A stretch of 63,271 nt of DNA, the filler included, from Octopus bimaculoides (Eukaryota), in assembly GCF_001194135.2 (NCBI RefSeq). It is 5 parts of 5 records of this genome, joined end to end, with 100 filler letters (N's around TTAATTAATTAA, not from the genome) between each part and the next. Parts side by side here need not be neighbours in the genome. Positions count along the whole stretch, not along the records: positions 1 to 20,888 come from NC_068985.1; 4 more parts are not named here. One strand, given 5' to 3'. The notes beneath the pieces were generated by a model. The model saw only the letters and a program-made list of their open reading frames with translations, was not told the origin of the DNA and searched no databases. Position numbers and translations under genes: made by a program. How positions within the stretch are numbered: the stretch's first letter is position 1; each line of letters starts with the position of its first letter. Shown here piece after piece: positions 2,414-20,888 of the stretch.

Positions 2414-3490
2414 ATAGTCTAAAGTGTAGTGTACACTCAAGTGAAATTCTTCTCCCCTTTATTATATATACATACATTTCAATGTAGCAGATAACAGCTA
2501 ACCTTTGGCAACTATTTGGACCCCGTTGTGTCCACTACTCTGATTGGTTGGTATTAGTACAATTTGTCCCTTACTCTGTCGCACCAATATGCAGCGTAAA
2601 ACCAATCGGAGCCCCTAAATAAGATTATGTAAGACAGCCTTTTCTCAACCCCGTTTTAACCTACTGTTAATTATAAAGAAACTCACTTTCTCCTCGTTTT
2701 GAAGTCTTTGGTTCCAGACCTTTTAAAATCTAGCTACTGACTATACAAAACACAGCCAGTTCCAGCGACAACGCCAGACGTCAACACCTGTCCAACAGCA
2801 AAACACCCAGGTTACAACACAGCACTGTTTGTGAATTACTTCACCATAGATCAACAGCAAATATGCAACCTGCAAGCCAGACGACAACACCTGTCCAACA
2901 GTATAGCAGCAACAACCGACTTTGTCGCCACCATCCTAACGACATCAACATCGTCTATAGGTACACAGCTCAACAAGCAACTCGCACAGGTTCCAATACT
3001 GCTCTATTTGTGAATTACTTCATGGTTAACAGCAAATATACAACCTGCGAGAGCTCCTGTACAAGTGACACAGGCAGCAGCATTACAGCCACAACTTCAT
3101 ACGACACGTACCGCAACCAGCTCTGCATCACCGTCTCTTCTTGATACAGTATTTCAACTACCGTGTACAATTGACTACAAACTGGTATTTTCTTTCCTGT
3201 GTCTATGAACATTCGTCTAACTTCTCATAATAGACTCTTTCACTTTCTTCCTCATTATTGTTCTATGTAGCACACACATACATCCATGCATATACAGACA
3301 TGCCCTCATGACGGCCTGTCTATTATTCTGTATACATGACGCACACACAGACACATGCTAACGTATCAATAAATCATCTCTCAAACATTCTACTCGGTTG
3401 TCTCTCTCTTTTCCAACAGGCACCTTATATGTATTATTCCAGCTTCCTGAACAAAGTCGTTATTAGATAGTTCCACCACGCTTCCATGAC
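2414..3490. other. Unidentified ~1.08-kb insert splitting the Helitron A reading frame
   Basis: RepHel reads ..YVRSFQYAFQM at 3491 and resumes TSTADFQVV at 2413. The intervening DNA has no Helitron motifs and has internal imperfect repeats. No TSD seen. Confidence 0.7.
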
Positions 3491-4552: not shown

Positions 4553-5264
4553 TTTATTAAAGGACTGAATTATTAAATTAATGTAATTGTTGAATATTTT
4601 TCAATAAATTCAGTAAGGGACTTTATCTTCAGTTTAAACTTTTGATGGTTTTGTGAACAGAACGCGACGGAAAATAACAACACCAAAAGGGATAAGATAC
4701 TAAATGATAACAAAATCCCCTTTAGAAATCTTTCTTTCAATCTTTGTGATAGATGAATGAGTGATTATAATTTTGTAAATAATAAAAACGAAATTAATAA
4801 GGGACTTCACCTTCAATGTTGACTTGAAACGTCTTCATGAAAAGAAAAGTGAACTGGCTCAAAGTATTTAGCAGACGATAACTTCTTCACAAATGGAAAA
4901 AACGGAATACTTCGGTTATTTCCGGATAATTTCGGTTTAACGTTGTCAAATACTTGTCTATAAATTTGCGAGTGTGCGTAAGTATGTGTTACAGAGAGAG
5001 AGGGAGACAGAGAGACAGACAGACTAACAAACGCAGAGCGAAAGACAGAGTGAAACAGACTGAGAGACAGAGAGAAAGAGACACGAGCGAGAAAGAGATT
5101 GATATGTGTCGCTCACACAACTCTGTCCTCCCCTTCTCTGATATCAGTCACACTCTCTATGCTACTATGTTTCCCCTTACACTGTCGCTCTTGCACCTTT
5201 CTCATTTTATCAAATGATAGCCCAACCTACCACTTCGATTGTATAATTCTTTTTTTTATTCTTT

Positions 5265-5592
5265 TATTTGTTTTAGTTATTTGACTGCGCCCATGCTAGA
5301 GCACCACATGTAGTCGAACAAACTGACCCCAGGACTTATTCTTTGTAAGCCTAGTTCTTATTCTATCAGTATCTTTTGTCGAACCATTAAGTTACTGGGA
5401 CGTAAACACACCAATATCGGTTGTCAAGCGATGGTGGAGTGGGGGAGGGGGCAAACACAGACACACAAACACACATATATTATTTATATCATTTATATAC
5501 GATTGGCTTCTTTCAGTTTCCGTCTACCAAATCAACTCACAAGGCTTTGGTCGGCCCAAGGCTATAGTAGAAGACACTTGCCCAAGGTGCCA
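5265..5592 (-). mobile_element. SINE family A (tRNA-derived), head truncated
   Basis: Matches the full-length copies at 38326-38723 and 37715-38137 (body GTAGACGGAAACTG, tail CAAATGACTGAAAC). Confidence 0.85.
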
Positions 5593-5624
5593 TATAAGAT
5601 ATAAAGATTATATATATATATAGA

Positions 5625-5737
5625 TATACTATGTGTGTGTGTCTTTGTTTGTCCCACCACCACCACTTGACAACCGGTGCTGGTTTGTTTATGTCCCCAT
5701 TACTTCGTAGTTTAGTAAAACAGACTGATAGAATAAG
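5625..5737 (+). mobile_element. SINE family A, central fragment ending at a gap
   Basis: CTTGACAACCGGTGCTGGT..GTCCCC..GATAGAATAAG as in family A. Confidence 0.75.
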
Positions 5738-6471: not shown

Positions 6472-6806
6472 AAATAGCAGTAGCATTCTTGCCTTTCCTG
6501 GGACTGCCACATTAAGTTGGCAACAAGTCATCACTTTATCATGCTGCTACTGCAATATTCCTAATTTTGTAGATCAGCAAATTTATTTCACTTCAAATTC
6601 TATAAGTTTCCAACAGCAATTTAGCACTGACAGCTAGCAAGGCTAAGCTACTCTAGACTGATAAAGAGCAATTATCCTGAAACTAGTCTCTGGATGCTGG
6701 CTTTGTTGGGTGGAGGTGCTTAACTCCCCTGTTTGAAAACTTAAGGACACAGAATGCTTGTGTTGCATAGCCAACTAGAAAATGTATTTCTTGAGGCTAA
6801 ATAGCA
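6472..6806 (+). mobile_element. Hammerhead-containing ~327-bp repeat monomer, copy 1 (retrozyme-like or Penelope pseudo-LTR-like)
   Basis: Bounded by the 8-bp direct repeat AAATAGCA (6472-6479, 6799-6806; period 327). Roughly 85-90% similar by eye to 11425-11713 but circularly permuted. Confidence 0.8.
6642..6701 (+). ncRNA. Type I hammerhead ribozyme, probably inactive (G8>A)
   Basis: Stem I CTAGA/TCTGG plus AGC/GCT; core CTGATAA (6658-6664); stem II AGAG-CAATTA-TCCT; GAAA; palindromic helix III ACTAGT; GTC site ending at 6688. Confidence 0.75.
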
Positions 6807-7382
6807 ATTTTAATCTTAATAATGATAACGTTTACAGTGAGTTACTTTGATATGAGTTTCAAGCTTCTCATAGGCATTTTCAAACTGAAAAATATATGTG
6901 TTACTGGCTGTCTAAATAGCAAAAGAATTTTTCTTACAAGTATATAAGCAAAAAAATATAAACAGAAAAGAGAAAAGAATATTAAAAAATATTTTAAAAA
7001 TATAAAAATTAAAATAAAAAATAATATATATATATGTGTAAAGAATGCAAAAGCATGTGTGAAGAAGGAGGAGGAGGAGGAGAAGAAGAAAAAGAAGAAG
7101 AAGAAGAACAACAACAACAACAAAAACACAAAGGAGGAAAGGAAGTCAAGAAGGGGAAGAAGAAGAGAAAAAAGTAAATGAAATGAAGAAAAAATAAATA
7201 TATAAAATAAAAATAAAATGGAAAATAAGCATAAAAACTAAGATTAATAGTATTTGAGAACAGTGGGGGGAAGGTTTAAGTCTATCAAATGGAAAATTTA
7301 GGAATGGTCGGTATTCTTGTGTTCTTGTCAAAAGTTGACGTGTGGTGAGGTTACCTATTCAGTTCTCACAGGTGGGATGGTG

Positions 7383-7385
<3 letters not shown>

Positions 7386-7444
<59 letters not shown>
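7386..7444. repeat. (CA)n microsatellite
   Basis: Directly visible. Confidence 0.98.
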
Positions 7445-7452
<8 letters not shown>

Positions 7453-7681
7453 CATATATATGTAGCATGGAATTTTGTCAGTGAACAGGTCGTAGTCTCA
7501 AACCGCCAAAAATTTTGGCAAATTAAATTTAAATGTTGGAGTGAATCTAATGATCTTTGTGTGTTTCTTAAATAGCTTATAAACACCTTCCACGCTGCAA
7601 TTTTTTTCCTTCCAGCACACGATCTCAGATCAAGTCACTTGCTATGCAAGTACATCTCTTATATGTATATATATATATATA

Positions 7682-7928
7682 TTAGGTTGGTGCTTAATTA
7701 TTGCAGCTTTTTTCAAATTTTATTCAACAAAAACAATAACAACATGTCACAAAAACATCTTTAAATGATTATTCTGGAGCATATTCACCTTCAACTTCAA
7801 TTACTGCTTCCCATTTGCTTGGCAGATGGTCAGACCGTCATTTAAAGATGTTTTTGTTAAATATTGTTATAGTTTTTGTTGAATAAAATTTCTTGAAAAA
7901 AAGCCGCAATAATTATGCACCAACCCAA
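7682..7928. mobile_element. mariner-derived MITE, 247 bp, TA target duplication
   Basis: TA|TTAGGTTGGTGCTTAATTATTGCAGC ... GCCGCAATAATTATGCACCAACCCAA|TA, with inverted repeats extending ~60 bp. The TIR resembles Hsmar1-type TTAGGTTGGTGCA. The interior encodes LPSKWEAVIEVEGEYAPE* (minus strand), like a mariner transposase C-terminus. Confidence 0.9.
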
Positions 7929-7977
7929 TACATGCATGCATACATACATACATACATACGTACATACATACATATAA

Positions 7978-8023
<46 letters not shown>

Positions 8024-8356
8024 CTGATACCAAACCAAAGATTGGTGTCATCTACNNNNNNNNNNNNNNNNNNNNNNNNNNNNNNNNNNNNNNNNNNNNN
8101 NNNNNNNNNNNNNNNNNNNNNNNNNNNNNNNNNNNNNNNNNNNNNNNNNNNNNNNNNNNNNNNNNNNNNNNNNNNNNNNNNNNNNNNNNNNNNNNNNNNN
8201 NNNNNNNNNNNNNNNNNNNNNNNNNNNNNNNNNNNNNNNNNNNNNNNNNNNNNNNNNNNNNNNNNNNNNNNNNNNNNNNNNNNNNNNNNNNNNNNNNNNN
8301 NNNNNNNNNNNNNNNNNNNNNNNNNNNNNNNNNNNNNNNNNNNNNCATACATATAA

Positions 8357-8402
<46 letters not shown>

Positions 8403-8889
8403 CTGATACCAAACCAAAGATTGGTGTCATCTACATATGCTTCACTAGTTTTTAAGAAACAAAAATAGATTCTTAGATTTAGCTTAATTCTTTTTGTTTT
8501 GTTTCTGAATTATTGATTACCAGAAAATGAAGTAAAATGAACAGTCAATGTATAGCTAGGTCAAGATTGACTCTGAGCATCAACATTCACAGGCATCCTT
8601 ATAACCTTGCTTTTAACAAAATGGTATTTTTAAGACATTTATCTTTTATTTATGTATTTTTTCATTTAAATGTTAAAAGCATTTGAGCAAGAATTCTTGA
8701 TAAATTCTTGATAAAGTAAATTCATTAATTATTATCTTTATTATTTAAGCTACTTGAATTTTTATTGATTTCAGGCAGTTTTGAAGATTAGAAATTTAAA
8801 GAAATTTATCTTCTGTTCTTTGTAAAAATTACTTGGAGAAATTAGATTCCTTTCTGTAATTTATCTTGTGAGTATAAAGAAATTTGTAG

Positions 8890-10400
8890 CATGGTTAGGC
8901 TTTGGCCATTATTAGACCAGACCATGTCTAACTTAATAGCATCAGCTACAGGATTCTTTGTTTTGGAACATTCATAGCCCACTTAAGTAGAGAGTTGCTA
9001 TTAGCTGAAGTATATTCAGGTGTCAGTGGTTTGTCTAATTTTTCTTGGTAAAATTTGCCCAGGTATTGTTTAAGTGTTGCAGGGATATTTTTCTTATTTA
9101 ATTTAATGCATGACTGATGCCAGTGCTATGTAAAAATCATCCAGTGCACTCTGTAATGTGGTTGGCATGAGTGAGGGTGTCAGACATTAGAAATCAAGCC
9201 AAATCAGACTGGAATTTGGTACAGCTCTATTGCTTGACAGCTCTGGTCAAACTGTCCAACCCATGCCAGCATGAAAAACAGACATTGAATAATGATGATG
9301 ATAATGTATTGCACTGGGGCTCAATCTTAGGTGAGCTGTAAACTTGATGCCAGTATCNNNNNNNNNNNNNNNNNNNNNNNNNNNNNNNNNNNNNNNNNNN
9401 NNNNNNNNNNNNNNNNNNNNNNNNNNNNNNNNNNNNNNNNNNNNNNNNNNNNNNNNNNNNNNNNNNNNNNNNNNNNNNNNNNNNNNNNNNNNNNNNNNNN
9501 NNNNNNNNNNNNNNNNNNNNNNNNNNNNNNNNNNNNNNNNNNNNNNNNNNNNNNNNNNNNNNNNNNNNNNNNNNNNNNNNNNNNNNNNNNNNNNNNNNNN
9601 NNNNNNNNNNNNNNNNNNNNNNNNNNNNNNNNNNNNNNNNNNNNNNNNNNNNNNNNNNNNNNNNNNNNGTTACACATAGGTCTCTGATATTAATTAATGC
9701 TATGAGAAACTCTCCCAAGGAAAAAGAGTATGGTCGTTTAAGTACATTGTATTTTCCATAGAGGATGAACTCAAATTTTTTCATTTAACTGCATGTCCCC
9801 TCCCCTCCCCATTGAATCACAGAGTGAGTTCTGTCCAGATGCATATTGACTTTCTGGAGCTTAAAGATTATAAGAAATGTTATTGTTTGATGACATTTTG
9901 GGAGTTATTTACGTAAATAATAAAAAGAAGTAGGCCTAATACAGTACCCTGGGGAGCACCACTAATGACTTTTGCTGAGCTTAAGTAAACTCTGTTGATC
10001 ATAACATGTTGGGTTCTGTTTACCACAAACTTCAGTGTTGTAGTTTTCTTTCAGCAGAATATTGTAATTGACTTTCTCAAAAGCTTTACTGAAGACAAGA
10101 TATATGTGTGACACCAGTTTTCTCCTAAAACATTTGGAATGTTATCGAGGTGGTTCTAAAGTTGTATTAGGAATTCTTTGCCACAGGACCCCCCCCCCCC
10201 GTGCTGGTTGGGATTTAGGAGACAGTTGCTCTCTAGAAAGACAATTACTTTTAGTCTCCCTACCTTATGAAAAGCTTTAATGAGGTGATAGTTCAGTGAG
10301 AGCAAGTGATAATTCTCTGGAAGTGACTTACTTCCTTTTTTTGAAAACTGGTATGACAGACTGAGATACAAACATGTTCAGGTATATGTCCTGTGTCTAG
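8890..10400 (-). mobile_element. CR1/L2-group LINE, degenerate RT to ORF2 C-terminus, split by a gap and a SINE
   Basis: PVFKKGSKSLPENYHLLSL, LLNPNQHG, SKAFEKV, SGAPQGTVLGLLLFIIYVN, NIRDLCV, and C-terminal LDKPLTPEYTSANSNSL near 8990-9070. Confidence 0.8.
9110..9305 (+). mobile_element. SINE 3' portion with (TGA)n tail (family C)
   Basis: GTGGTTGGCATGAG..GTCAAACTGTCCAACCCATGCCAGCATGAAAAACAGACATT followed by ATGATGATGAT. Family assignment is from recall of octopus SINE tails. Confidence 0.6.
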
Positions 10401-10564
10401 TGGTTTCCTACAGAGATTGAAGTGTTGCAAGTAGATAGAGGTGGGGCAAGTTGACGGCACTAGTGGGGAGCCTACAGCGGTGGGGATCTACTGCTGAGTT
10501 GTATTTTATTTATTGTCATTATGGTGTCCAGGGTACTAAAAGTTATCTCAAGGAGGATATTCTT

Positions 10565-10771
10565 TTATTTCTTTCAGTCATTTGACTGTGGCTATGCTGG
10601 AGCACCACCTTCAGTTGCACAAATCGACCCCAGGACTTATTCCTTGTAAGCCTAGTCCTTATTCTATCAGTCTCTTTTGCCAAACCGCTAAGTTACAGGC
10701 ATGTAAACACACTAATATCGGTTGTCAAGTGATGGTAAAGGGGGAAGAAACGCAAACACACAAACATATAG

Positions 10772-10835
<64 letters not shown>

Positions 10836-10992
10836 GGATTCTTTTAGTTTCCATCTACCAAATCCACTCACAAGGCTTTGGTCGGCCTGAAGCTATAGTA
10901 GAAGGCACTTGTCCAAGGTACCACACAGTGGGACTGAACCCAGGACCATGTGGTTGGCAAGCAAGCTACTTACCACACAGCCACTCTTGTGC
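10565..10992 (-). mobile_element. SINE family A, near full length
   Basis: Head TGGCTGTGTGG (A box) and GGTTCAGTCCC (B box), internal (TA)n, tail CAAATGACTGAAAG. Confidence 0.9.
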
Positions 10993-11029
10993 CTTGACAA
11001 TTTATTTGACTAATACTTCCTGTGGTGCA

Positions 11030-11110
11030 AACATACCTGTGTGGTTAAGAAGCTTGGTTGCAGCCATGTGGTTTCAGGTTCAGTCCCACTCTGTCACACC
11101 TTGGGCAAAT
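11030..11110 (+). mobile_element. SINE family A, head only
   Basis: CTGTGTGGTTAAGAAGCTTG..GGTTCAGTCCCACT..CCTTGGGCAA. Confidence 0.75.
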
Positions 11111-11333
11111 TTATTGTTTCAAAATAGAGCAATCCACAAGTAGAAAGTTGAGGTCATTCGTACATTTCCAGAGTTGCATTGACACAATAAAACATTAACA
11201 TTTTATAAATATAAACAAACTTACATTTGTTTTTATTAGAAACATCAAAATGTGTATTGTACAATACAAACAAGAAGTGATATTTTTTTGAACGCAGTAT
11301 TAATTTACTCATTATTTCTGCTATTCTAACTGC

Positions 11334-11713
11334 AATGCGAGACAAACATTCTGTGTCCTTAAGTTTTCAAACAGGTGAGATAAGCGCCTCCACCCAACAA
11401 AGCCAGTCCAGAGAGATTTAGAAATGCAATATTTCTAATTTTGAAAATCAGAGAATTTATTTCACTTGAAATTCTATAAGTTTTCAACAGCGATTTAGCA
11501 CTGACAGCTAGCAAAGCCAAGCTACTCTAGACTGATGAAGGGCAATTATTCTGAAACTAGTCTCTGAATGCTGGCCTTGTTGGGTGGAGGTGATTATTTC
11601 CCATCTGGAAACTTAAGGACACAGAACGCTTGTGTCGCATCACCAACTACAAAATGTGTTTCTTGGGGCTAAGTAGCAGTAGCATTCTTTCCTTTCCTGG
11701 GACTGCCACATTA
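11334..11713 (+). mobile_element. Hammerhead-containing repeat, copy 2: inverted 5' segment (11334-11415) plus permuted direct unit (11425-11713)
   Basis: 11425-11678 aligns to 6551-6806 and 11674-11713 to 6475-6514 (39/40). The reverse complement of 11334-11415 aligns to the sequence just after the cleavage site. Confidence 0.85.
11516..11575 (+). ncRNA. Type I hammerhead ribozyme with intact catalytic core
   Basis: GCC-A-AGC-TACT-CTAGA | CTGATGA (11532-11538) | AGGG-CAATTA-TTCT | GAAA | CTAG | TC^ TCTGA-AT-GCT-GGC. All conserved core residues are present; predicted cleavage after C11562. Stem II relies on two G-U pairs. Confidence 0.8.
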
Positions 11714-11842
11714 TTGCATAACTCTCTCTTAGAGATTTGCAAATGCAATAATTCTAAAAATAAAAATGATCGGCATTCTTTCGATACAAGTACTAGAAAT
11801 GTCAAGCGCACACGTGATCCCTCAAAAAACTCATCTCTTCTC

Positions 11843-11895
<53 letters not shown>
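11843..11895. repeat. (AAT)n microsatellite
   Basis: Directly visible. Confidence 0.98.
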
Positions 11896-12714: not shown

Positions 12715-14513
12715 AGAAAAAGAAAAAGCCTTCATGGATGAAGTGACACTTCTATCTATAGATAAGCAAATCATGCAGAGTGCCCTCTTGAAACTAGACG
12801 AGCTTGTGAGGTGGTCAAGGATGCGGTTTAGAGCAAAAAAAAAACAAAACAAAAAAAAAAGTCGGGTAGTCTGACATCTGTTATGGGAGTGCAGAAAGAA
12901 GTTAAGTTTCGAATAGCTGAAGAAAGCATTTCAATATTCAAAGAAGAACCCACCAAGAGCTTGGGGTGAGTATACACTGGGACATTGTCAGATAGGAGTC
13001 GCGGAATGGAAATTATGAAACAAGCCGAGGTTGGATTATCAGCGATTGATAACTCAAAGTTTGGTGCTTACAGTTCGGCTTGTGTCCGCGACTTTCGTGG
13101 CTACTTTTAATATACGAGTTCGGATCATTGAACAAGAATGTAATGTATTCATTAGAAAGTGACTAGGCCTACCTCGGATGTTGAACAGTTCAGCTCTTTA
13201 TCGTAAAAGATGCTCATTGCAGTTACCACGGGTGTCAATGGTCGAAATATATAAACTGGGGAAGGTACGAAAGGTGATGATGCTGAGAGAGTCGAAGGAC
13301 ATGGAAATCAGGCGTAATTCACTATAGGTGAAAACAGCCTGGAATTGGAAAGCAGAAGCAGAGGCTGATGACATCTTGTCTTCTCTTACACACCGAGATA
13401 TGGTGGGTGCAACGCAGAATCATCGGAAGGGAGTTGGTTTTGGCGCAGATCAGTTCAGACCGTTTGCAAGTTTGATGCGGAGCGAACGCAGATCTGTTGT
13501 TAGCAACAGCGTCAAAACGAGGGAAGCAGAGAGAAGAGAGCTTCATTTGGTCCTATATGTTCAACAAGGACAGATGACGAGATGGGAGGAACATGTTATT
13601 GAGAGGAAAATAAGTTGGGATGAGATTTGGAAGTGGACCACATCTCGGCTAAGTTTTCTGATTCGTACATCCGACGATGTTTTGCCATCACCTGCAAATC
13701 TAATAAGATGGAACGTCTCAGAGAATGATATATGCAAATGCGGAAAGGTCGGAACACTGAAACATATTCTTTCCAACTGTTCACTAGCATTGAACAGGTA
13801 TACATGGAGACACAACCTGGTCCTTAAGGTTATCTTCAATGCTATAAAGAGCCAAATTGATCTCAACAACAGTGGAAAAAAAGACCGTTGAAAGTACCAA
13901 CTAGAGATTTCATTACCTTCGTGCGCTCAGGACAGCGGATCCGTTTCAAGAACAACAAACTTCCTGTTAGCGATGAAAAGTGGAACGGCTATTGGGAGGT
14001 AACTACAGATTTACCAGGGTGCCAAGGACTCTTCCCCGTCCCAGTTACGAAAAAAACGGACATTTTAATGTGGTGTGAAGGAAAGAAAGTTATGAATCTA
14101 GTTGAGTTAACGGTTCCTCATGAAGATAACACGGACACCGCTCAGGTTCGAAAGATTGACCGTTATGTAAACCTCCTCGAGAAATGTGAAGACGCAGGCT
14201 GGAAAGCGGAGCATTTTCCAATAGAAGTCGGATGTAGAGGGTTTGTTGGACACAGTGTGAGACGACTGTTGTTATTGTTAGGCCTAACTCATCGTAACGT
14301 AAATACCACCATGACCGATATCCAAGCTACAATGGAAAAGACGAGCCACTGGATTTGGTTAAAAAGAGACGATGAGCGATGGCTAGAAGAATATTGGGCT
14401 TTATTTAATAACCAGTTGATCTAGCAAGCAGGGCTATGATCTAGCAAGCAGATCTATCAGTGAGTGGGGCCGGTACGCATTGATGCCATCGATAGGTAGG
14501 CCCCCTCCTGATA
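12715..14513 (+). mobile_element. HERO-like (RLE-type) non-LTR retrotransposon, 5'-truncated: RT C-terminus, Zn knuckle, restriction-like endonuclease, 3' UTR
   Basis: KAFMDEVTLL..WSRMRF..SRSL..EEPTKSLG*; WKAEAEADDILSSLTHRDMVG; QQGQMTRWEE..RKISWDEIW..FLIRTSDDVLPSPANL; CKCGKVGTLKHILSNC..RYTWRHNLVL; TDIL..ELTVPHE..RKIDRY..PIEVGCRGF..EKTSHWIWLKR. Frameshifted. Clade assigned from motif recall. Confidence 0.85.
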
Positions 14514-15257: not shown

Positions 15258-17906
15258 CGCGCAAGTATTATGTGAATGTGAGAAAGTTTGGTTATTTTTA
15301 TACCTCACGCTGTGTAAATAAGATACCAATATTGTCATCATAATACAATCGCCTGTCTCACTATTATGTTTTTATTTTCATGCTATTCTATTTAATTAAT
15401 AGATATTTAATTAAGATTTGTCCATGGAAGAGGAAAGGTCCAATTATAGAAGACCTGCAAAATGTCTGAGTCGGCAATTACGAAAATTGAGGCAAACACA
15501 AGAACAGAAGGAAGAGCATCGTAAAAGGAACACAGAAAAATGGCGTCAGCTCCGTTTAACGCAGTCACAGAAGTGAAGAAAGCAAATTTTAGAACAAGAT
15601 GCTGCTCAGTATAGAAATGCAAGGCAACATCTATCACAAGAACAACGTGAACAGACTTTAGAACAAAATGCTACTCAGCATCGAAATGCAAGGCTACAAC
15701 TGTCACAAGAGCAACGTGAGCAGATTTTAGAACAAAATGCAGCACAACACAGAATACGTCGGTAAATCAGTAATAGGCTGACTCTTAATATAGCTCGACA
15801 ATATGATATAGATGGACTTCTACAGGTTCCCGTTGACGTTGCTCGCCATAGTGGAAGTGCGTTGCCACCACTGCAATGCTTTGATGTTTATTGGAGAGCG
15901 TACAGGAAGAACAATCGCAGTTTTGGTATATGCTGTAAATCAGGAATGATAAAAATTGAAAATATCCCTGAGTTATCTAACGAACTTGCTGACCTCTTTC
16001 TTTCTAATGCTACTGAAGTAAAATGTAATATTCGAAGGTTCAACAGCGCAATGGCAATGTGTTCTATGAAAGTAGATGATACTTCAATACTGAGAGGGAT
16101 TACAAATTACAGATTACATGGAATTCGTTATAGATTTATTGGAGTTCATAGAAACCATATAGGAACAGTCCTGTCTAGCTTACAAACGTATTTCTATGAT
16201 CATAAAGAACAAATAAGAAGACGAATGGAAAGAATGCCTCTTAACAATGCAAACCAAGCCTTCGATGTAAACATATTTCGAAAAATTCATTCTGCTATGA
16301 TATCTGTTGGAAATACTTACAATCTTTTCTATCTGTGCAGGAGCAAACTGACGCTGAAAATATTCCTGCTGATGTGTCAGTTGGCTTACATGCGGATAAA
16401 AAAACCTCATGGGGAACACTCCAGGAGATATAATCTACCAACATCTAATGAGCATGCTATTCTTATACCAAACAATCTTCATGAGGAAACGAATTGTTCA
16501 GAACGAATGGTCGTAACAAAATTCAGAGCAGTGAATAACCAAAAATCTTTGCAAATATTAAGTGACTCGCATCGATCATACGACACAATGATGTACCCGA
16601 GTTTTTTTCCTTCTGGCCTAGATGGGTGGCACCTTGGATTACTGAATGAAAATGGCAACTGTCAAATTTCAAAAGTTCAATTTTATTGTTATCACATCAT
16701 GAAAAGAACAAGAGCTACAAATATATTGCAATTAGGTCAGCATTTGTTTCAGCAATATTGTGTAGATCAATTTCCCAAAGTACAATCCACCCGTCTACGA
16801 TATGTTCGTAACAATGAAGCAACCTTAAGAGCTGATTTATATAATGGTTTACAAGATGCTATACTTGCAGGTGATACTGATCGTACAGGTCGTAAATATA
16901 TATTGCCAAGTTCATTTATAGGAAGTCCACGATATATGGCAAAACACTACCAGGATGCAATGGCCATAGTTAGAAAGTTTGGCAAACCTACTTTACTTTT
17001 GACTTTTACATGCAGCCCAAAATGATATGAAATAGTTAACGAGCTTTCTGTGGGCCACAAGGCGGTTGACCGACCAAGATATCACTACAAGAGTATTTAA
17101 ATTAACGCAACAGTAACTATTGCACGATATCAAATCAGGAGTCCTTGGGAAACTTATTGCTCATGTGAACACTGGAATTTCAAAATAGTGGATTACCTCA
17201 TTGCCGTTTCTTATTCATAATACAAAATCATCACAACACATGGCAAGAAATTAATAAAATTGTTACAACTGAACTTCCAAATCCCGAAAACCCATTGACG
17301 TCTCATCTTTATTCCTTGGTGAAGAAACACATGATACATGGACTCTGCGGAAAAGAAAATATAAATTCTCCCTGTATGGTGAATGGCGTTTGCACTAAAA
17401 GATATACAAAAGATTACAAATCACAAACCTTAACTGGAAATGATTCTTATCCACAATATCGTCGCCGAAACCCTCGAGATGCTGGCTTCACAGCTTCAAT
17501 ACGTATTGGAAATAGAGAAATTGTTGATAACCGTTATGTAGTTCTTTATAATGCTTGGTTGTTGCAGAAGTACGAGGCGCATATTAATCTTGAATGGTTT
17601 GTATCTATTAAGGCTGTGAAATATCTTTACAAGTACATTTTCAAAGGTGTTGACCATGCAACAGTTTCTTTACACAGACAAGAAGATGGCATGCATCTTA
17701 ATGTTGGCAACGAAAATCAAATGGATGAAATTTCGAATTACGAAAATTACCGCTATATTGGAGCGTCAGAGGCTTGCTGGAGATCATTTGAGTTTCCAAT
17801 TCAACAAAGGCAGCCTGCTGTTGAATGCTTGCCGATACACTTGTCAGATCAACAGCTGATTGTGTTTAATCTGAATCATGCACAAGAAATCGAAATTTAC
17901 ATGTAA
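14700..17906 (+). mobile_element. Helitron B: 5' terminus plus RepHel N-terminus and Rep domain; helicase half absent
   Basis: A|TCCTTACAATAATGACAGC 5' end, then Rep-region ORFs 15862-17025 and 17295-17906. No convincing hairpin-CTAG 3' end. Confidence 0.88.
15500..17906 (+). pseudogene. Helitron RepHel (HUH Rep) pseudogene
   Basis: GICCKSG, FNSAMAMCS, SDSHRSYDTMMYP, QQYCVD, LPSSFIGSPRYMAKHYQDAMAIVRKFGKPTLLLTFTCSP (motif 1), EFQNSGLPHCRFL (motif 2, HUH mutated, 17175-17219), YLYKYIFKG (motif 3), IGASEACWR. Confidence 0.95.
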
Positions 17907-19048: not shown

Positions 19049-19150
<102 letters not shown>

Positions 19151-19859
19151 TTCCCTCCTTGGCGCCCCCAGTCGACTGCACGAGTTGCTGGTACCTTGAG
19201 CCAGCTCTGTTAATACTTAAAGGCAAATTGATAAACAAGAGTAGAAAAATAGTTCCAGCATTGGTAGAAATAAGAGCCAACGGTGACTAGATACCTATAC
19301 AAAACACTAACTTCATGAGATTGACGAAAAATGAGGGAGCGAGCAAAAGTACCTTTCTATGGTGAGATAAACTCACAAAATGAAGAAAACAGATATATCC
19401 ATGTCACATGATTTCGAACTCTGATAATGATCTTAGTTCTCATCACTGGACCTTCCTGATACTCTGCACATCTTCTCTTCCTATTCTGTGTTTCTTGGAC
19501 TTCATCTGTATCTACCTCCTCTGTCTTCCTTCAGCTTCTCGTTGCTACTGCTTTCCTCCTGTCTCACCTCCATTGGTGTTTGGTTATCGAGAAGGGGGCA
19601 ATTTGCCTTAATATGGCCCTTCTTAATGCAGTGATAGTATGTGAGAGATCTTCCCTCCACTACCACATGAGCTCGCAGCCGACTGATACTACTTACTGAG
19701 CCTGTCCATTATTTATCAGTAGTGGACCAACCCACTTCTCGATTGAAATTAATATAATATATTCATTTCTTTATTAGCCACTGAGAGCCCAACATAGAGG
19801 AGACAGTACATGTACAGGAAAACAAGTGGGGACATAAAACATAAAAGAATGAATAAAAA

Positions 19860-20888
19860 TGAAAACTATCAGTCCCGTTAATTCCGAACATTCCACAAAT
19901 GCATGCAAGATGGTTTCCCTGTCCAACCCACACCTCGGACACGTCGGTGAGACGGCACTTCCGTGCCTTGACAGTTTATCACGAACAGGTAACGCCGCAC
20001 GGAAGCACTGCCAAGCCAAGGATTTCTGGTAATTGCCCAGGTACCCGGGCCCGAAAGTTCTCCGGAACAGGTTGATCAACTGATTTTCATCGTAGCCCAG
20101 GGTCTCCCCCAAGGCGTCTTCGGACTTAAACTCTACTAACCCGCTATAAAAATCCGCAGTGGAACTTCTATTGCCGGCATTGCCCGCCCGAGAGAGTAGC
20201 TGAAGTGCCTGTCGGCACTCCAATTGCCAGTCCCCCATCCTAGGTCTCTGCTTGATCCAATTACCAACGTCCGTTAAGGACGTTAATTGCGGAAGGTAGA
20301 ACCTGACATGCGGTGACCACACCTGCTCTCCATCCAGGTAAAGCCAGAGGTGCCTCAACCTTAACGCGAATTTTCGCATCCTCAGCCAAGGCATCCCTAG
20401 CCCACCCTTTAGCGGTTTCTGGCAACAGACAGAGCGCTTCACGAGTGGCTTTCCTCCCTTCCACAAAAAGCGGAAAAGGATTCTTTCCAACTTGTTTAGC
20501 TACAAATCGGGGCAAGGCACCACGGTCAGGCGGTAGGTGATAACCGATGCTATGAACATATGCACCACCTTCGCCTTTCCTAGCAAGGATAACGCCCGCC
20601 CAGACCAGGTCTGGGTTAGAGCAGTCACCTTGCTGGCCACCTCACTCCAATTTTTCTCTATCTGGAGGTCTGGTGCGAACCAGACTCCGAGCAGCTTAAC
20701 AGGACCTTCCGTCCAACGCCACACGACGTTATTGGATGGCATCGGCTTGCCTCTCCAGGTGCCGAGCTGCAAACCGATCGACTTGTCCTTGTTAACCTTT
20801 ACTCCTGCCACCGCCTCGTAACTTTGATAGCCTCTTCCACCGCTGGAAGCTGGCCCTCATCGGCCACGATGATGGAGATGTCATCCGC
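19860..20888 (-). mobile_element. L1/Tx1-clade LINE fragment (RT C-terminus to CCHC), cut by a gap
   Basis: ADDISIIV, AGVKVNKDKS..VKLLGVWF, LSLLGKAKVV..VITYRL, FLWKGGKPLVKRSVCCQKPLKGGLGMP, LPVRDKL..CPRCG..ETILHAFVEC. GC-rich relative to flanks. Confidence 0.9.

What the first reader, a model, noticed from the sequence alone, without database searches (positions are those of the whole stretch)
6472..11713. Retrozyme-like ~327-nt hammerhead element present as two circularly permuted copies
Seen: copy 1 (6472-6806) reads X-spacer-Y and ends with an 8-bp repeat of its own start (period 327). Copy 2 (11425-11713) reads Y-X, so the end of Y runs straight into X. Both contain a type I hammerhead. 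Copy 2 has the complete CUGAUGA/GAAA/GUC core and an extended, bulged stem I whose pairing is supported in both copies. Helix III is the palindrome ACUAGU with only a 2-nt loop. Known: palindromic minimal helix III hammerheads work as dimers in tandem repeats, and non-LTR retrozymes of similar size in some metazoans give circular RNAs. Inference: this is a cephalopod retrozyme or PLE-dependent family copied from a circular or multimeric RNA. I cannot tell whether it has been described.
Basis: partly seen in the sequence, partly recalled or inferred. Interest (0 to 1): 0.9.

Follow-up and report, generated by a model that had tools for sequence, protein, structure and literature searches.

The report
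Hammerhead retrozyme copies in an octopus
Two decayed, circularly permuted copies and one inverted stub of a ~320-base non-coding mobile element that carries a self-cutting hammerhead RNA: a "retrozyme" of the kind known from mussels, corals and salamanders, found here in an octopus-type genome and therefore a new family rather than a new kind of thing.

Summary
Copy 1 is 6472-6806: one 327-nt unit plus an 8-nt repeat of its own start. Copy 2 is longer than reported, 11412-11757: period 319, with a 27-nt terminal repeat. It aligns colinearly to a tandem of copy 1 but starts about 67 nt further round the circle. Its sense 5' end falls on the predicted ribozyme cut site.

The type I hammerhead is real at the sequence level. 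A descriptor finds only 11526-11568 in the window (0.002 hits expected per shuffled window). A covariance model built from four experimentally validated retrozyme hammerheads ranks the two claimed sites first and second (E about 0.001-0.003). Rfam itself reports nothing. Both copies are dead: copy 1 has G8>A and a broken helix II, copy 2 a broken helix I pair.

The best reading is a non-LTR retrozyme family, probably mobilised by Penelope-like elements, in an octopod genome. Each direct copy covers one turn of the unit plus a short overlap, so its template was circular or multimeric. Cleavage, circular RNA and the reverse transcriptase partner are inferred. I could obtain no other family members. 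It is a new member of a known kind.

The parts
6472..6806 (+). Copy 1: one 327-nt unit (X 6472-6514, spacer 6515-6550, Y 6551-6798) plus an 8-nt terminal redundancy (6799-6806 = 6472-6479, AAATAGCA).
   Evidence: (D7, D11, D16)
6652..6694 (+). Hammerhead of copy 1, decayed. CUGAUAA (G8>A at 6663). Helix II AGAG/UCCU has an A.C mismatch. Helix I UCUAGA/UCUGGA is an intact 6 bp. Predicted cut after C6688 (unit position 217).
   Evidence: 18.7 bits, E 0.0012, full-length match
11412..11757 (+). Copy 2: 319-nt unit plus 27-nt terminal redundancy (11412-11438 ~ 11731-11757, 24/27). The order is spacer' tail, Y, X (11671-11713), spacer' (11714-11743), first 14 nt of Y. It aligns colinearly to a copy-1 tandem from unit position 80 to 420, and the 27-nt repeat places its left end at about unit position 67.
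11526..11568 (+). Hammerhead of copy 2 with a complete core: UCUAGA CUGAUGA AGGG CAAUUA UUCU GAAA CUAG UC | UCUGAA. Cut predicted after C11562. Helix I has one C.A mismatch, caused by G>A at 11567.
   Evidence: the only descriptor hit; 0.002 expected per shuffled window; 17.3 bits, E 0.0032
11508..11583 (+). Extended, bulged stem I that closes the hammerhead. 11508-11522 pairs with 11570-11583, and a UAC/U internal loop sits next to the 6-bp helix I. The same pairing occurs in copy 1 (about 6634-6648 with 6696-6709).
11324..11414 (-). Inverted, 5'-truncated partial copy (unit positions 216/219 to about 309), head-to-head with copy 2. Its sense 5' end coincides with the predicted ribozyme cut site (between unit 217 and 218), within a 3-nt junction microhomology (aga, 11412-11414).
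   Evidence: (I1)

Best explanation
These are three dead genomic insertions of one family of short (~320 nt), non-coding, hammerhead-bearing retroelements of the non-LTR retrozyme type, in an octopod genome.

Proposed life cycle, with each step marked shown or inferred:

1. Master copies elsewhere, arranged as tandem repeats of two or more units, are transcribed into multimeric RNA (inferred).
2. The type I hammerhead has only an A-U pair plus a palindromic CUAG loop as helix III. It is therefore poorly stable as a monomer and pairs with the hammerhead of the neighbouring unit through ACUAGU/ACUAGU. Each ribozyme cuts after GUC, at unit position 217. (The motif and the palindrome are shown. 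The monomer fold lies 11-14 kcal/mol above the minimum free energy fold. Cleavage is inferred.)
3. Unit-length RNA is circularised by a host RNA ligase (inferred from the published retrozyme pathway).
4. A reverse transcriptase, most likely that of a Penelope-like element, copies the circle from a variable start point. It goes once round and stalls shortly after meeting its own cDNA 5' end. This would give insertions of one unit plus 8 nt (copy 1) and one unit plus 27 nt (copy 2), with different start points. (The geometry is shown. The circular RNA template, the stalling and the enzyme are inferred.)
5. The inverted stub beside copy 2 is a cDNA that ran to the 5' end of a ribozyme-cleaved linear RNA. 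It was joined head-to-head, as happens when both strands of a cut target prime synthesis. (The position of the end is shown. The event is inferred.)

After insertion the copies decayed neutrally.
For: Hammerhead:
- It is the only descriptor hit in the window, and only 3 of 2000 shuffles gave any hit.
- Model R1 was trained on the coral, mussel and two axolotl retrozyme hammerheads (sequences from the supplement of PMC7229834; alignment A2). It ranks 6652-6694 and 11526-11568 first and second, at 18.7 and 17.3 bits against 10.5 for the third hit and 11.8 for the best hit in 25 kb of control DNA.
- Features that were in neither the descriptor nor the paired part of the model also match the axolotl ribozymes. 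Loop 2 is CAAUUA against CAAAAA. The stem I internal loop is 5'-UAC/3'-U followed by AGC/GCU, against UUC or UGC/U followed by a GC-rich closing stem (read).
- Where the copies differ, the state that pairs or fits the core is present in one of them. The third copy supports G in helix I. The implied ancestor has a 6-bp helix I, a 4-bp helix II (AGGG/UCCU) and an intact core.

Circle or tandem origin:
- Copy 1 shows X-spacer-Y-X(8 nt). Copy 2 shows Y-X-spacer-Y(14 nt). Together they close a ~320-nt circle.
- Both direct copies are just over one unit long (1.02 and 1.08 units) and start at different points (unit 1 and about unit 67).
- The 8-mer is internal to the element: it also sits at the Y-X junction of copy 2. 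It is therefore not a target-site duplication.

Cut site: the sense 5' end of the inverted fragment lies at unit 216-219 and the predicted cut is at 217/218. That is 4 of 327 possible positions, about 1%.

Penelope-like style: an inverted 5'-truncated copy next to a direct copy is a described signature of Penelope-like insertions (PMC8557442). A purified Penelope-like protein cleaves and extends both target strands (PMC11167929).

Family fit: 319-327 nt, no ORF, 39% GC, and AT-rich flanks for copy 1. Dispersed monomers are known for such families (bioRxiv 10.64898/2026.07.22.740005).
Against: - Rfam 15 gives no hammerhead match at either site, even at E<=10.
- The model R1 scores are modest and its E-values are rough.
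- Position 10.1-11.1 is A-U rather than the highly conserved G-C, and helix II is weak in both copies.
- The descriptor's 0.002 hits per 20 kb still implies hundreds of chance hits in a genome of gigabase size. The case therefore rests on the conjunction with the repeat geometry.
- Only three copies are available. There is no covariation and no sign of constraint: 4 differences in 43 nt of hammerhead against 12% overall.
- No tandem array and no Penelope-like ORF are present in the window.
- No target-site duplication rises above chance.
- Whole-unit circular folds are only moderately better than shuffles (z -2.6 and -1.1).
- The inverted fragment is closer to copy 1 (89%) than to its neighbour copy 2 (80%). 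The head-to-head pair may therefore be two events, or two different template RNAs.
- The three sense 3' ends (unit 8, 93 and about 309) share no fixed initiation site, unlike the internal initiation reported for a Penelope-like element.
Confidence: 0.65

Rival explanations
1. DNA-level origin. The unit is a satellite monomer. Extrachromosomal circular DNA (or array fragments) of the satellite re-integrated by end joining, which would give permuted copies slightly longer than one unit without any reverse transcription. The hammerhead may still work in satellite transcripts, as in newt satellite 2.
For: The permutation and the short terminal redundancy could equally come from a staggered opening of a DNA circle. 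No target-site duplication, poly(A) tail or other retrotransposition mark is visible. The three sense 3' ends share no fixed site.
Against: The inverted fragment ends at the RNA cut site, and a DNA circle has no reason to break there. The head-to-head arrangement matches the signature of Penelope-like retroelement insertions. No array lies nearby in 20 kb.
Confidence: 0.15
2. The copies are remnants (solo pseudo-LTRs or heavily truncated tandems) of an autonomous Penelope-like element, not of a separate non-autonomous family.
For: Type I hammerheads lie in the pseudo-LTRs of Penelope-like elements, whose insertions are partial tandems with inverted 5'-truncated copies. Retrozymes are reported to be related to these pseudo-LTRs. 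Penelope elements occur in cephalopods.
Against: The circle closes within ~320 nt in both copies, leaving no room for an ORF. There is no RT or GIY-YIG domain between or beside the copies in six frames. The RTs in the window are LINE-type. The canonical 6-bp/4-bp hammerhead with loop-loop nucleotides is the retrozyme type, whereas metazoan Penelope-like elements carry minimal variants.
Confidence: 0.1
3. A chance hammerhead-like motif in an ordinary interspersed repeat, with the permutation being an accident of two truncated insertions or of misassembly.
For: No Rfam hit. Helix II is weak and position 10.1-11.1 is A-U. The fold z-score of the 87-nt hammerhead segment is about 0. Many windows were screened. 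The scaffold has gaps and one overlapping gap.
Against: Descriptor probability about 0.0015 per window. The independent model puts both sites on top. Loops 1 and 2 match the axolotl ribozymes. Both copies are gap-free contiguous sequence. The copies close the circle reciprocally. The inverted fragment ends at the cut site.
Confidence: 0.07

Closest known systems
Metazoan non-LTR retrozymes (Cervera and de la Pena 2020, PMC7229834), e.g. the Mytilus galloprovincialis 350-390 bp and Acropora millepora 220-240 bp families
   Same: A type I hammerhead inside a non-coding unit of a few hundred bp with GC below 50% and no LTR, PBS or PPT. The unit closes on itself. The hammerhead is closed by a long self-paired stem. 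The host is a mollusc.
   Different: No sequence similarity outside the ribozyme core. The window holds only dispersed copies of 1.02-1.08 units and no multi-unit array. Expression as circular RNA is untested. Helix III is the minimal amphibian type, not the more stable invertebrate type (mussel ACGCGCGU, coral ACAGUACUGU).
Axolotl/newt satellite-2 type hammerhead (HHR_Amex1; ~330-bp repeats)
   Same: Helix III is one A-U pair capped by a palindromic tetraloop (CAUG there, CUAG here). Loop 2 is CAAAAA there and CAAUUA here. Both have a U-N-C/U internal loop in stem I and a unit of about 330 nt. Efficient cleavage is reported only for the dimeric form.
   Different: A different phylum and an unrelated unit sequence. 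Helix II here starts with A-U and is weaker. Copy number is unknown.
Pseudo-LTR hammerheads and insertion architecture of Penelope-like elements (PMC4209133, PMC8557442, PMC11167929)
   Same: A palindromic, minimal helix III. Partial tandem insertions of more than one unit. An inverted 5'-truncated copy beside a direct copy. AT-rich targets.
   Different: No RT/GIY-YIG ORF, and the circle is only ~320 nt. The hammerhead has canonical 6-bp and 4-bp helices rather than the long helix II and short helix I of metazoan Penelope-like minimal variants. No recognisable 30-40-bp 'tail', and no fixed 3' initiation site.
Schistosoma Sm-alpha SINE-like hammerhead repeats (from my own knowledge; not checked with the tools)
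   Same: A ~330-nt dispersed and tandem non-coding repeat with a canonical type I hammerhead, a UAC bulge in stem I and a CAAAUA-like loop 2.
   Different: Sm-alpha is described with pol III promoter boxes, and none were looked for here. The unit sequence is unrelated.
Plant LTR retrozymes (PMC4918200)
   Same: Non-autonomous retroelements whose hammerheads release unit RNA that circularises.
   Different: Those have type III hammerheads inside ~350-bp LTRs, a PBS and PPT, 4-bp target duplications and Gypsy dependence. None of these features is present here.

Membership tests
Type I hammerhead ribozyme (canonical metazoan form) | Conserved core CUGANGA ... GAAA ... UH, with the cleavage site 3' of H17 | tested here: met
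   Copy 2, 11532-11538 CUGAUGA, 11553-11556 GAAA, 11561-11562 UC. Copy 1 has CUGAUAA (G8>A), so only copy 2 meets it.
Type I hammerhead ribozyme (canonical metazoan form) | Helix I about 6 bp (open), helix II about 4 bp (closed), helix III 1-2 bp with a small palindromic loop (PMC4209133) | tested here: met
   Helix I pairs: 6/6 in copy 1, 5/6 in copy 2. Helix II pairs: 3/4 in copy 1, 4/4 in copy 2 (two of them G-U). Helix III is A-CUAG-U in both.
Type I hammerhead ribozyme (canonical metazoan form) | G10.1-C11.1 pair at the base of helix II | tested here: not met
   A-U at this position in both copies (11539/11552 and 6665/6678).
Type I hammerhead ribozyme (canonical metazoan form) | Match to the Rfam hammerhead models at the gathering score | tested here: not met
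   No hammerhead family is listed even at E<=10 on slices of 101-501 nt. A custom model built from four validated retrozyme hammerheads gives 17.3-18.7 bits, E about 1e-3.
Type I hammerhead ribozyme (canonical metazoan form) | Self-cleavage | not testable with these tools
   Needs in vitro transcription of monomer and dimer. The only indirect hint is the inverted fragment ending at unit 216-219.
Non-LTR retrozyme (PMC7229834) | Non-coding unit of about 150-450 bp with GC below 50% and no LTR, PBS or PPT | tested here: met
   Units of 327 and 319 nt. Stops in all six frames. GC 39%. No terminal repeat other than the element's own 8- and 27-nt redundancy.
Non-LTR retrozyme (PMC7229834) | Head-to-tail tandem organisation in multiple copies | tested here: inconclusive
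   Both unit junctions (Y-X and X-spacer-Y) are present, but each locus holds only 1.02-1.08 units and no array lies in the window. Dispersed monomers are reported for such families. The rest of the genome could not be searched.
Non-LTR retrozyme (PMC7229834) | Expressed as linear and circular RNA of unit length | not testable with these tools
   No transcriptome access.
Non-LTR retrozyme (PMC7229834) | Highly self-paired predicted circular RNA | tested here: inconclusive
   Circular MFE -89.0 (z -2.6) for copy 1 and -74.5 (z -1.1) for copy 2, with about 60% of bases paired. The long stem closing the hammerhead is shared by both.
Non-LTR retrozyme (PMC7229834) | Co-occurrence with autonomous Penelope-like elements in the genome | not tested
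   None in this window. The literature reports Penelope-like elements in cephalopods.
Autonomous Penelope-like element | ORF with a telomerase-like RT and a GIY-YIG endonuclease between pseudo-LTRs | tested here: not met
   No such domain in six frames of 6807-11323 or in the window's larger ORFs.

The most novel reading that the evidence does not exclude
The insertion geometry is a genomic footprint of the so-far hypothetical mobilisation step of animal retrozymes. In this reading, a small circular RNA is reverse-transcribed for a single turn. Synthesis stops 8-27 nt after the enzyme meets its own cDNA start, which gives permuted copies of 1.02-1.08 units. The machinery is Penelope-like and primes from both strands of the target, and the second cDNA runs to the exact 5' end made by the ribozyme. 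If this pattern holds genome-wide, it would be sequence-level evidence that hammerhead-cleaved and circularised RNAs are the transposition templates. It would also make the question testable by a simple census of copy ends.
Probability: 0.3. Interest if true: 0.7.

Novelty: new member of a known kind. Interest (0 to 1): 0.45.

Why it matters
Non-LTR retrozymes are abundant sources of ribozyme-made circular RNA in animals. How they move, and whether they depend on Penelope-like elements, is still argued from co-occurrence and similarity. In the literature I could search I found no characterised cephalopod family. There was only a count of Rfam hammerhead hits in the giant squid.

This locus adds a cephalopod family with an amphibian-style dimer-dependent hammerhead. 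More usefully, it shows single-turn permuted insertions and an inverted partner ending at the cut site. A genome-wide census of these features could test the circular-RNA template model directly. With only three decayed copies in hand, it remains a lead, not a result.

Tried and rejected
1. Rfam 15 at permissive thresholds on 20.9 kb, 501 nt (twice) and 101 nt gave no hammerhead. The miRNA and other hits are microsatellite artefacts.
2. Recovering other family members all failed:
   - A six-frame 'polyprotein' of both copies against the 5.8-billion protein collection gave nothing at E<=1.
   - An 18-mer shared by all three copies, scanned against the JGI metagenomes, gave 13 loci, all chance matches of 19-26 nt.
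   - A 25-mer from the hammerhead gave 0 hits in the GTDB genomes and 0 in IMG/VR.
   - The one octopus chromosome segment I could fetch (L014, 22 kb) holds no copy.
   - The window's own ORF is not on record.
   - A second polyprotein of the window's transposon ORFs returned only short metagenome contigs.
3. Segmental duplication as the source of the two copies is rejected. A second repeat pair (5257-5592 and 10558-10923) lies upstream of both copies, but it is 77% identical against 88-95% for the copies, the DNA in between is not homologous, and the X/Y order differs.
4. Copies 1 and 2 as the two pseudo-LTRs of one element are rejected.
5. Nested insertion as the origin of the inverted stub is rejected. 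The rest of a minus-strand copy is not found beyond 11757.
6. Target-site duplications are not above chance: shuffled flanks gave a repeat at least as long in 375/500, 322/500 and 68/500 trials.
7. Thermodynamics of the hammerhead segment are uninformative: z about 0, and the monomer hammerhead fold lies 11-14 kcal/mol above the MFE.
8. No tRNA-like part.

Full report
**What is in the sequence.**
- Copy 1 occupies 6472-6806. It starts with AAATAGCA and ends with the same 8-mer 327 nt later.
- Repeat finding and BLAST of the unit against the window give three further pieces: 11425-11678 (88% to unit 80-335), 11671-11713 (95% to unit 1-43) and, on the opposite strand, 11332-11414 (89% to unit 216-300).
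- Aligning 11380-11800 to a trimer of the copy-1 unit gives one colinear alignment from unit position 80 to 420. It runs through Y, X and a diverged, slightly shorter spacer, then into the first 14 nt of Y again.
- Together with the 27-nt direct repeat 11412-11438/11731-11757 (24/27), copy 2 is therefore 11412-11757. That is a 319-nt unit plus a 27-nt redundancy, not 11425-11713.
- Copy 1 demonstrates the path X-spacer-Y-X. Copy 2 demonstrates Y-X-spacer-Y. Between them they close a circle of about 320 nt.
- The 8-mer at both ends of copy 1 is also present at the internal Y-X junction of copy 2 (AAGTAGCA). It belongs to the element and is not a target-site duplication.

**Assembly gaps.** The finding's span includes gaps at 8056-8345 and 9358-9668.
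- The 89 nt before the first gap are identical to the 89 nt after it. The contig ends overlap, so the gap is probably spurious.
- The second gap shows no overlap, and continuity there is unknown.
- Both gaps lie between the copies. Each copy and the inverted fragment sit in uninterrupted sequence, so only the distance between them is uncertain.

**The hammerhead.**
- Copy 2 reads UCUAGA CUGAUGA AGGG CAAUUA UUCU GAAA CUAG UC | UCUGAA (11526-11568).
- This is the canonical metazoan type I plan given in PMC4209133: helix I of 6 bp, helix II of 4 bp, and helix III of 1-2 bp with a small palindromic loop.
- A descriptor written to that plan finds only this site on either strand of the window. In 2000 dinucleotide shuffles of the window it found 4 hits, in 3 shuffles.
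- Rfam reports no hammerhead at all, even at E<=10 on a 101-nt slice.
- As an independent test I took the four hammerheads of cloned, self-cleaving retrozymes from the supplement of PMC7229834: coral Amil224, mussel Mg353, and axolotl Ax353 and Ax330. I aligned them, built a covariance model and searched the window with filters off.
- The two claimed sites are the top two full-length hits, at 18.7 bits (E 0.0012) and 17.3 bits (E 0.0032). The third hit has 10.5 bits. The best hit in 25 kb of control DNA has 11.8 bits. The E-values are rough.
- Two features outside the descriptor also agree with the axolotl ribozymes. Loop 2 is CAAUUA, against CAAAAA in Ax330. Helix I is followed by a 5'-UAC/3'-U internal loop and an AGC/GCU closing stem, against UGC or UUC/U in the axolotl (read).
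- Helix III (A, CUAG, U) is the HHR_Amex1 type, described as a single base pair capped by a palindromic tetraloop that cleaves efficiently only as a dimer.
- Departures from the canon: A-U instead of G-C at 10.1-11.1, and a weak helix II.

**State of the copies.**
- The two hammerheads differ at 4 of 43 positions, all transitions. The copies differ by 12% overall.
- Copy 1 has G8>A and an A.C mismatch in helix II. Copy 2 has a C.A mismatch in helix I.
- At each of these positions the other copy has the functional state, and the inverted fragment supports G in helix I.
- The simplest ancestor has an intact core, UCUAGA/UCUGGA and AGGG/UCCU. The copies look like neutrally decaying insertions of a once-competent ribozyme. 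There is no evidence of constraint on these particular copies.
- The monomeric hammerhead fold is 11-14 kcal/mol less stable than the MFE. The MFE uses an alternative AGACUG/UAGUCU helix that buries the core and the cut site. This fits a ribozyme that is off in the monomer, but it proves nothing.
- Whole-unit circular folds share the long stem that closes the hammerhead. They are only moderately better than shuffles (z -2.6 and -1.1).

**The inverted fragment.**
- Read in its own sense, 11414 back to about 11324 corresponds to unit 216/219 through about 309.
- Its sense 5' end meets the left end of copy 2 with 3 nt of ambiguity (aga, 11412-11414). The predicted cut, between unit 217 and 218, lies inside that interval.
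- An arbitrary break would land there about 1% of the time (4 of 327 positions).
- The rest of a minus-strand copy is not found on the far side of copy 2, so this is a true truncation and not a nested insertion.
- An inverted 5'-truncated copy adjoining a direct copy is a described signature of Penelope-like insertions. A purified Penelope-like protein cuts and extends both strands of its target.
- One caution: the fragment is closer to copy 1 (89%) than to its neighbour (80%). The two halves came from different subfamily templates, or from two separate events.

**Mechanism proposed.**
- Multimeric transcripts of master arrays are cut by hammerheads that dimerise through ACUAGU.
- The unit RNA is circularised by a host ligase, as shown for other retrozymes (PMC7229834).
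- A reverse transcriptase copies the circle from a variable start. It stops shortly after running into its own cDNA, leaving one unit plus 8 or 27 nt.
- A second cDNA, made on a cleaved linear RNA, ends at the ribozyme-made 5' end.
- Shown here: the motif, the circle closure, the just-over-one-unit lengths, the different start points, and the position of the inverted end. Everything involving RNA or enzymes is inferred.

**Points that do not fit neatly.**
- There is no target-site duplication above chance.
- The three sense 3' ends lie at unit 8, 93 and about 309, with no common site.
- No Penelope-like ORF is in the window. The RTs present are LINE-type, and the interval between the copies has no RT or GIY-YIG hit in six frames.

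**Host and surroundings.**
- The Helitron-like region 15764-17888 is 90% identical over 2162 nt to Octopus bimaculoides chromosome CM046601.1.
- A second interspersed repeat of the window is also present in that octopus segment.
- The genome is therefore octopod, species undetermined.
- The window is 38% GC and is a mosaic of transposon remnants and microsatellites.

**Comparison with the known.**
- Non-LTR retrozymes with type I hammerheads are established in cnidarians, a mussel, the axolotl and, by bioinformatics, many invertebrate phyla. Dispersed monomers and a relationship to Penelope-like pseudo-LTRs have also been reported.
- For cephalopods I found only a count of 235 Rfam Hammerhead_1 hits and a mention of Penelope elements in the giant squid genome paper. 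I found no paper combining retrozymes and cephalopods beyond a passing mention. This covers open-access text only.
- The element is a new member of a known kind. Its most interesting aspect is the insertion geometry, which rests on three copies.

**Limits.** I could not obtain any further family member. Copy number, arrays, covariation and the distribution of ends are therefore all open.

Noticed in passing
window 7967-8055 and 8346-8434 (flanks of gap 8056-8345): The 89 nt before the gap are 100% identical to the 89 nt after it. The scaffold gap is most likely an unmerged contig overlap, so the true sequence would be about 379 nt shorter, unless this is an unresolved tandem duplication.
   Followed up: yes
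window 5257-5592 (+), 5592-5737 (-), 10558-10923 (+); L014 21495-21720: A second interspersed repeat of about 340-370 nt with an internal CA/TA microsatellite. There are two direct copies (77% identical). One inverted partial copy abuts the 3' end of the first, and it is followed by a 15-N gap. The repeat is also present at 75-83% in the Octopus bimaculoides segment. ARAGORN sees no tRNA-like part. The direct-plus-inverted arrangement resembles that of copy 2.
   Followed up: partly
window 15564-17906 (+): A Helitron remnant. The ORF 15862-17025 has Helitron_like_N (E 9e-28) and is preceded by three 69-nt (23-codon) tandem repeats at 15564-15754. It is 90% identical at the DNA level to an O. 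bimaculoides locus annotated LOC106871358.
   Followed up: partly
window 13328-14424 (+), 19774-20811 (-), 9883-10029 (-): Remnants of non-LTR (LINE-type) retrotransposons. There are zf-RVT matches, and the closest database relatives carry RVT_1, one of them with an Exo_endo_phos domain. A short GAPQGTVLGLLLF RT-motif fragment lies at 9883-10029. None is Penelope-like.
   Followed up: partly
window 11318-11329 (left flank of the inverted fragment): Read in the fragment's sense, the flank continues ...TTAGAA TAGCAG AAAT. GAATAGCAG resembles the AAATAGCAG at which copy 1 starts and ends. If a ~20-nt internal deletion is allowed, the inverted fragment and copy 1 would share the same sense 3' end, which would hint at a preferred initiation site. 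The match is only 8 of 9 nt and was noticed post hoc.
   Followed up: no
window 7929-7999, 10759-10836 and others: The Rfam 'mir-297', 'mir-1277' and 'mir-3149' matches (E down to 1.5e-8, all below the gathering scores) fall on (TACA)n/(TA)n microsatellites and are low-complexity artefacts.
   Followed up: yes
window 2773-3022: Short direct repeats (33 and 60 nt, 75-88% identical, spacing 103 and 179 nt) inside a stretch with a 93-codon ORF (2863-3144). Not examined.
   Followed up: no
window 11846-11895; 7386-7444; 19050-19150: Long (AAT)n, (CA)n and (TG)n microsatellites. The (AAT)n run lies about 90 nt downstream of copy 2.
   Followed up: no
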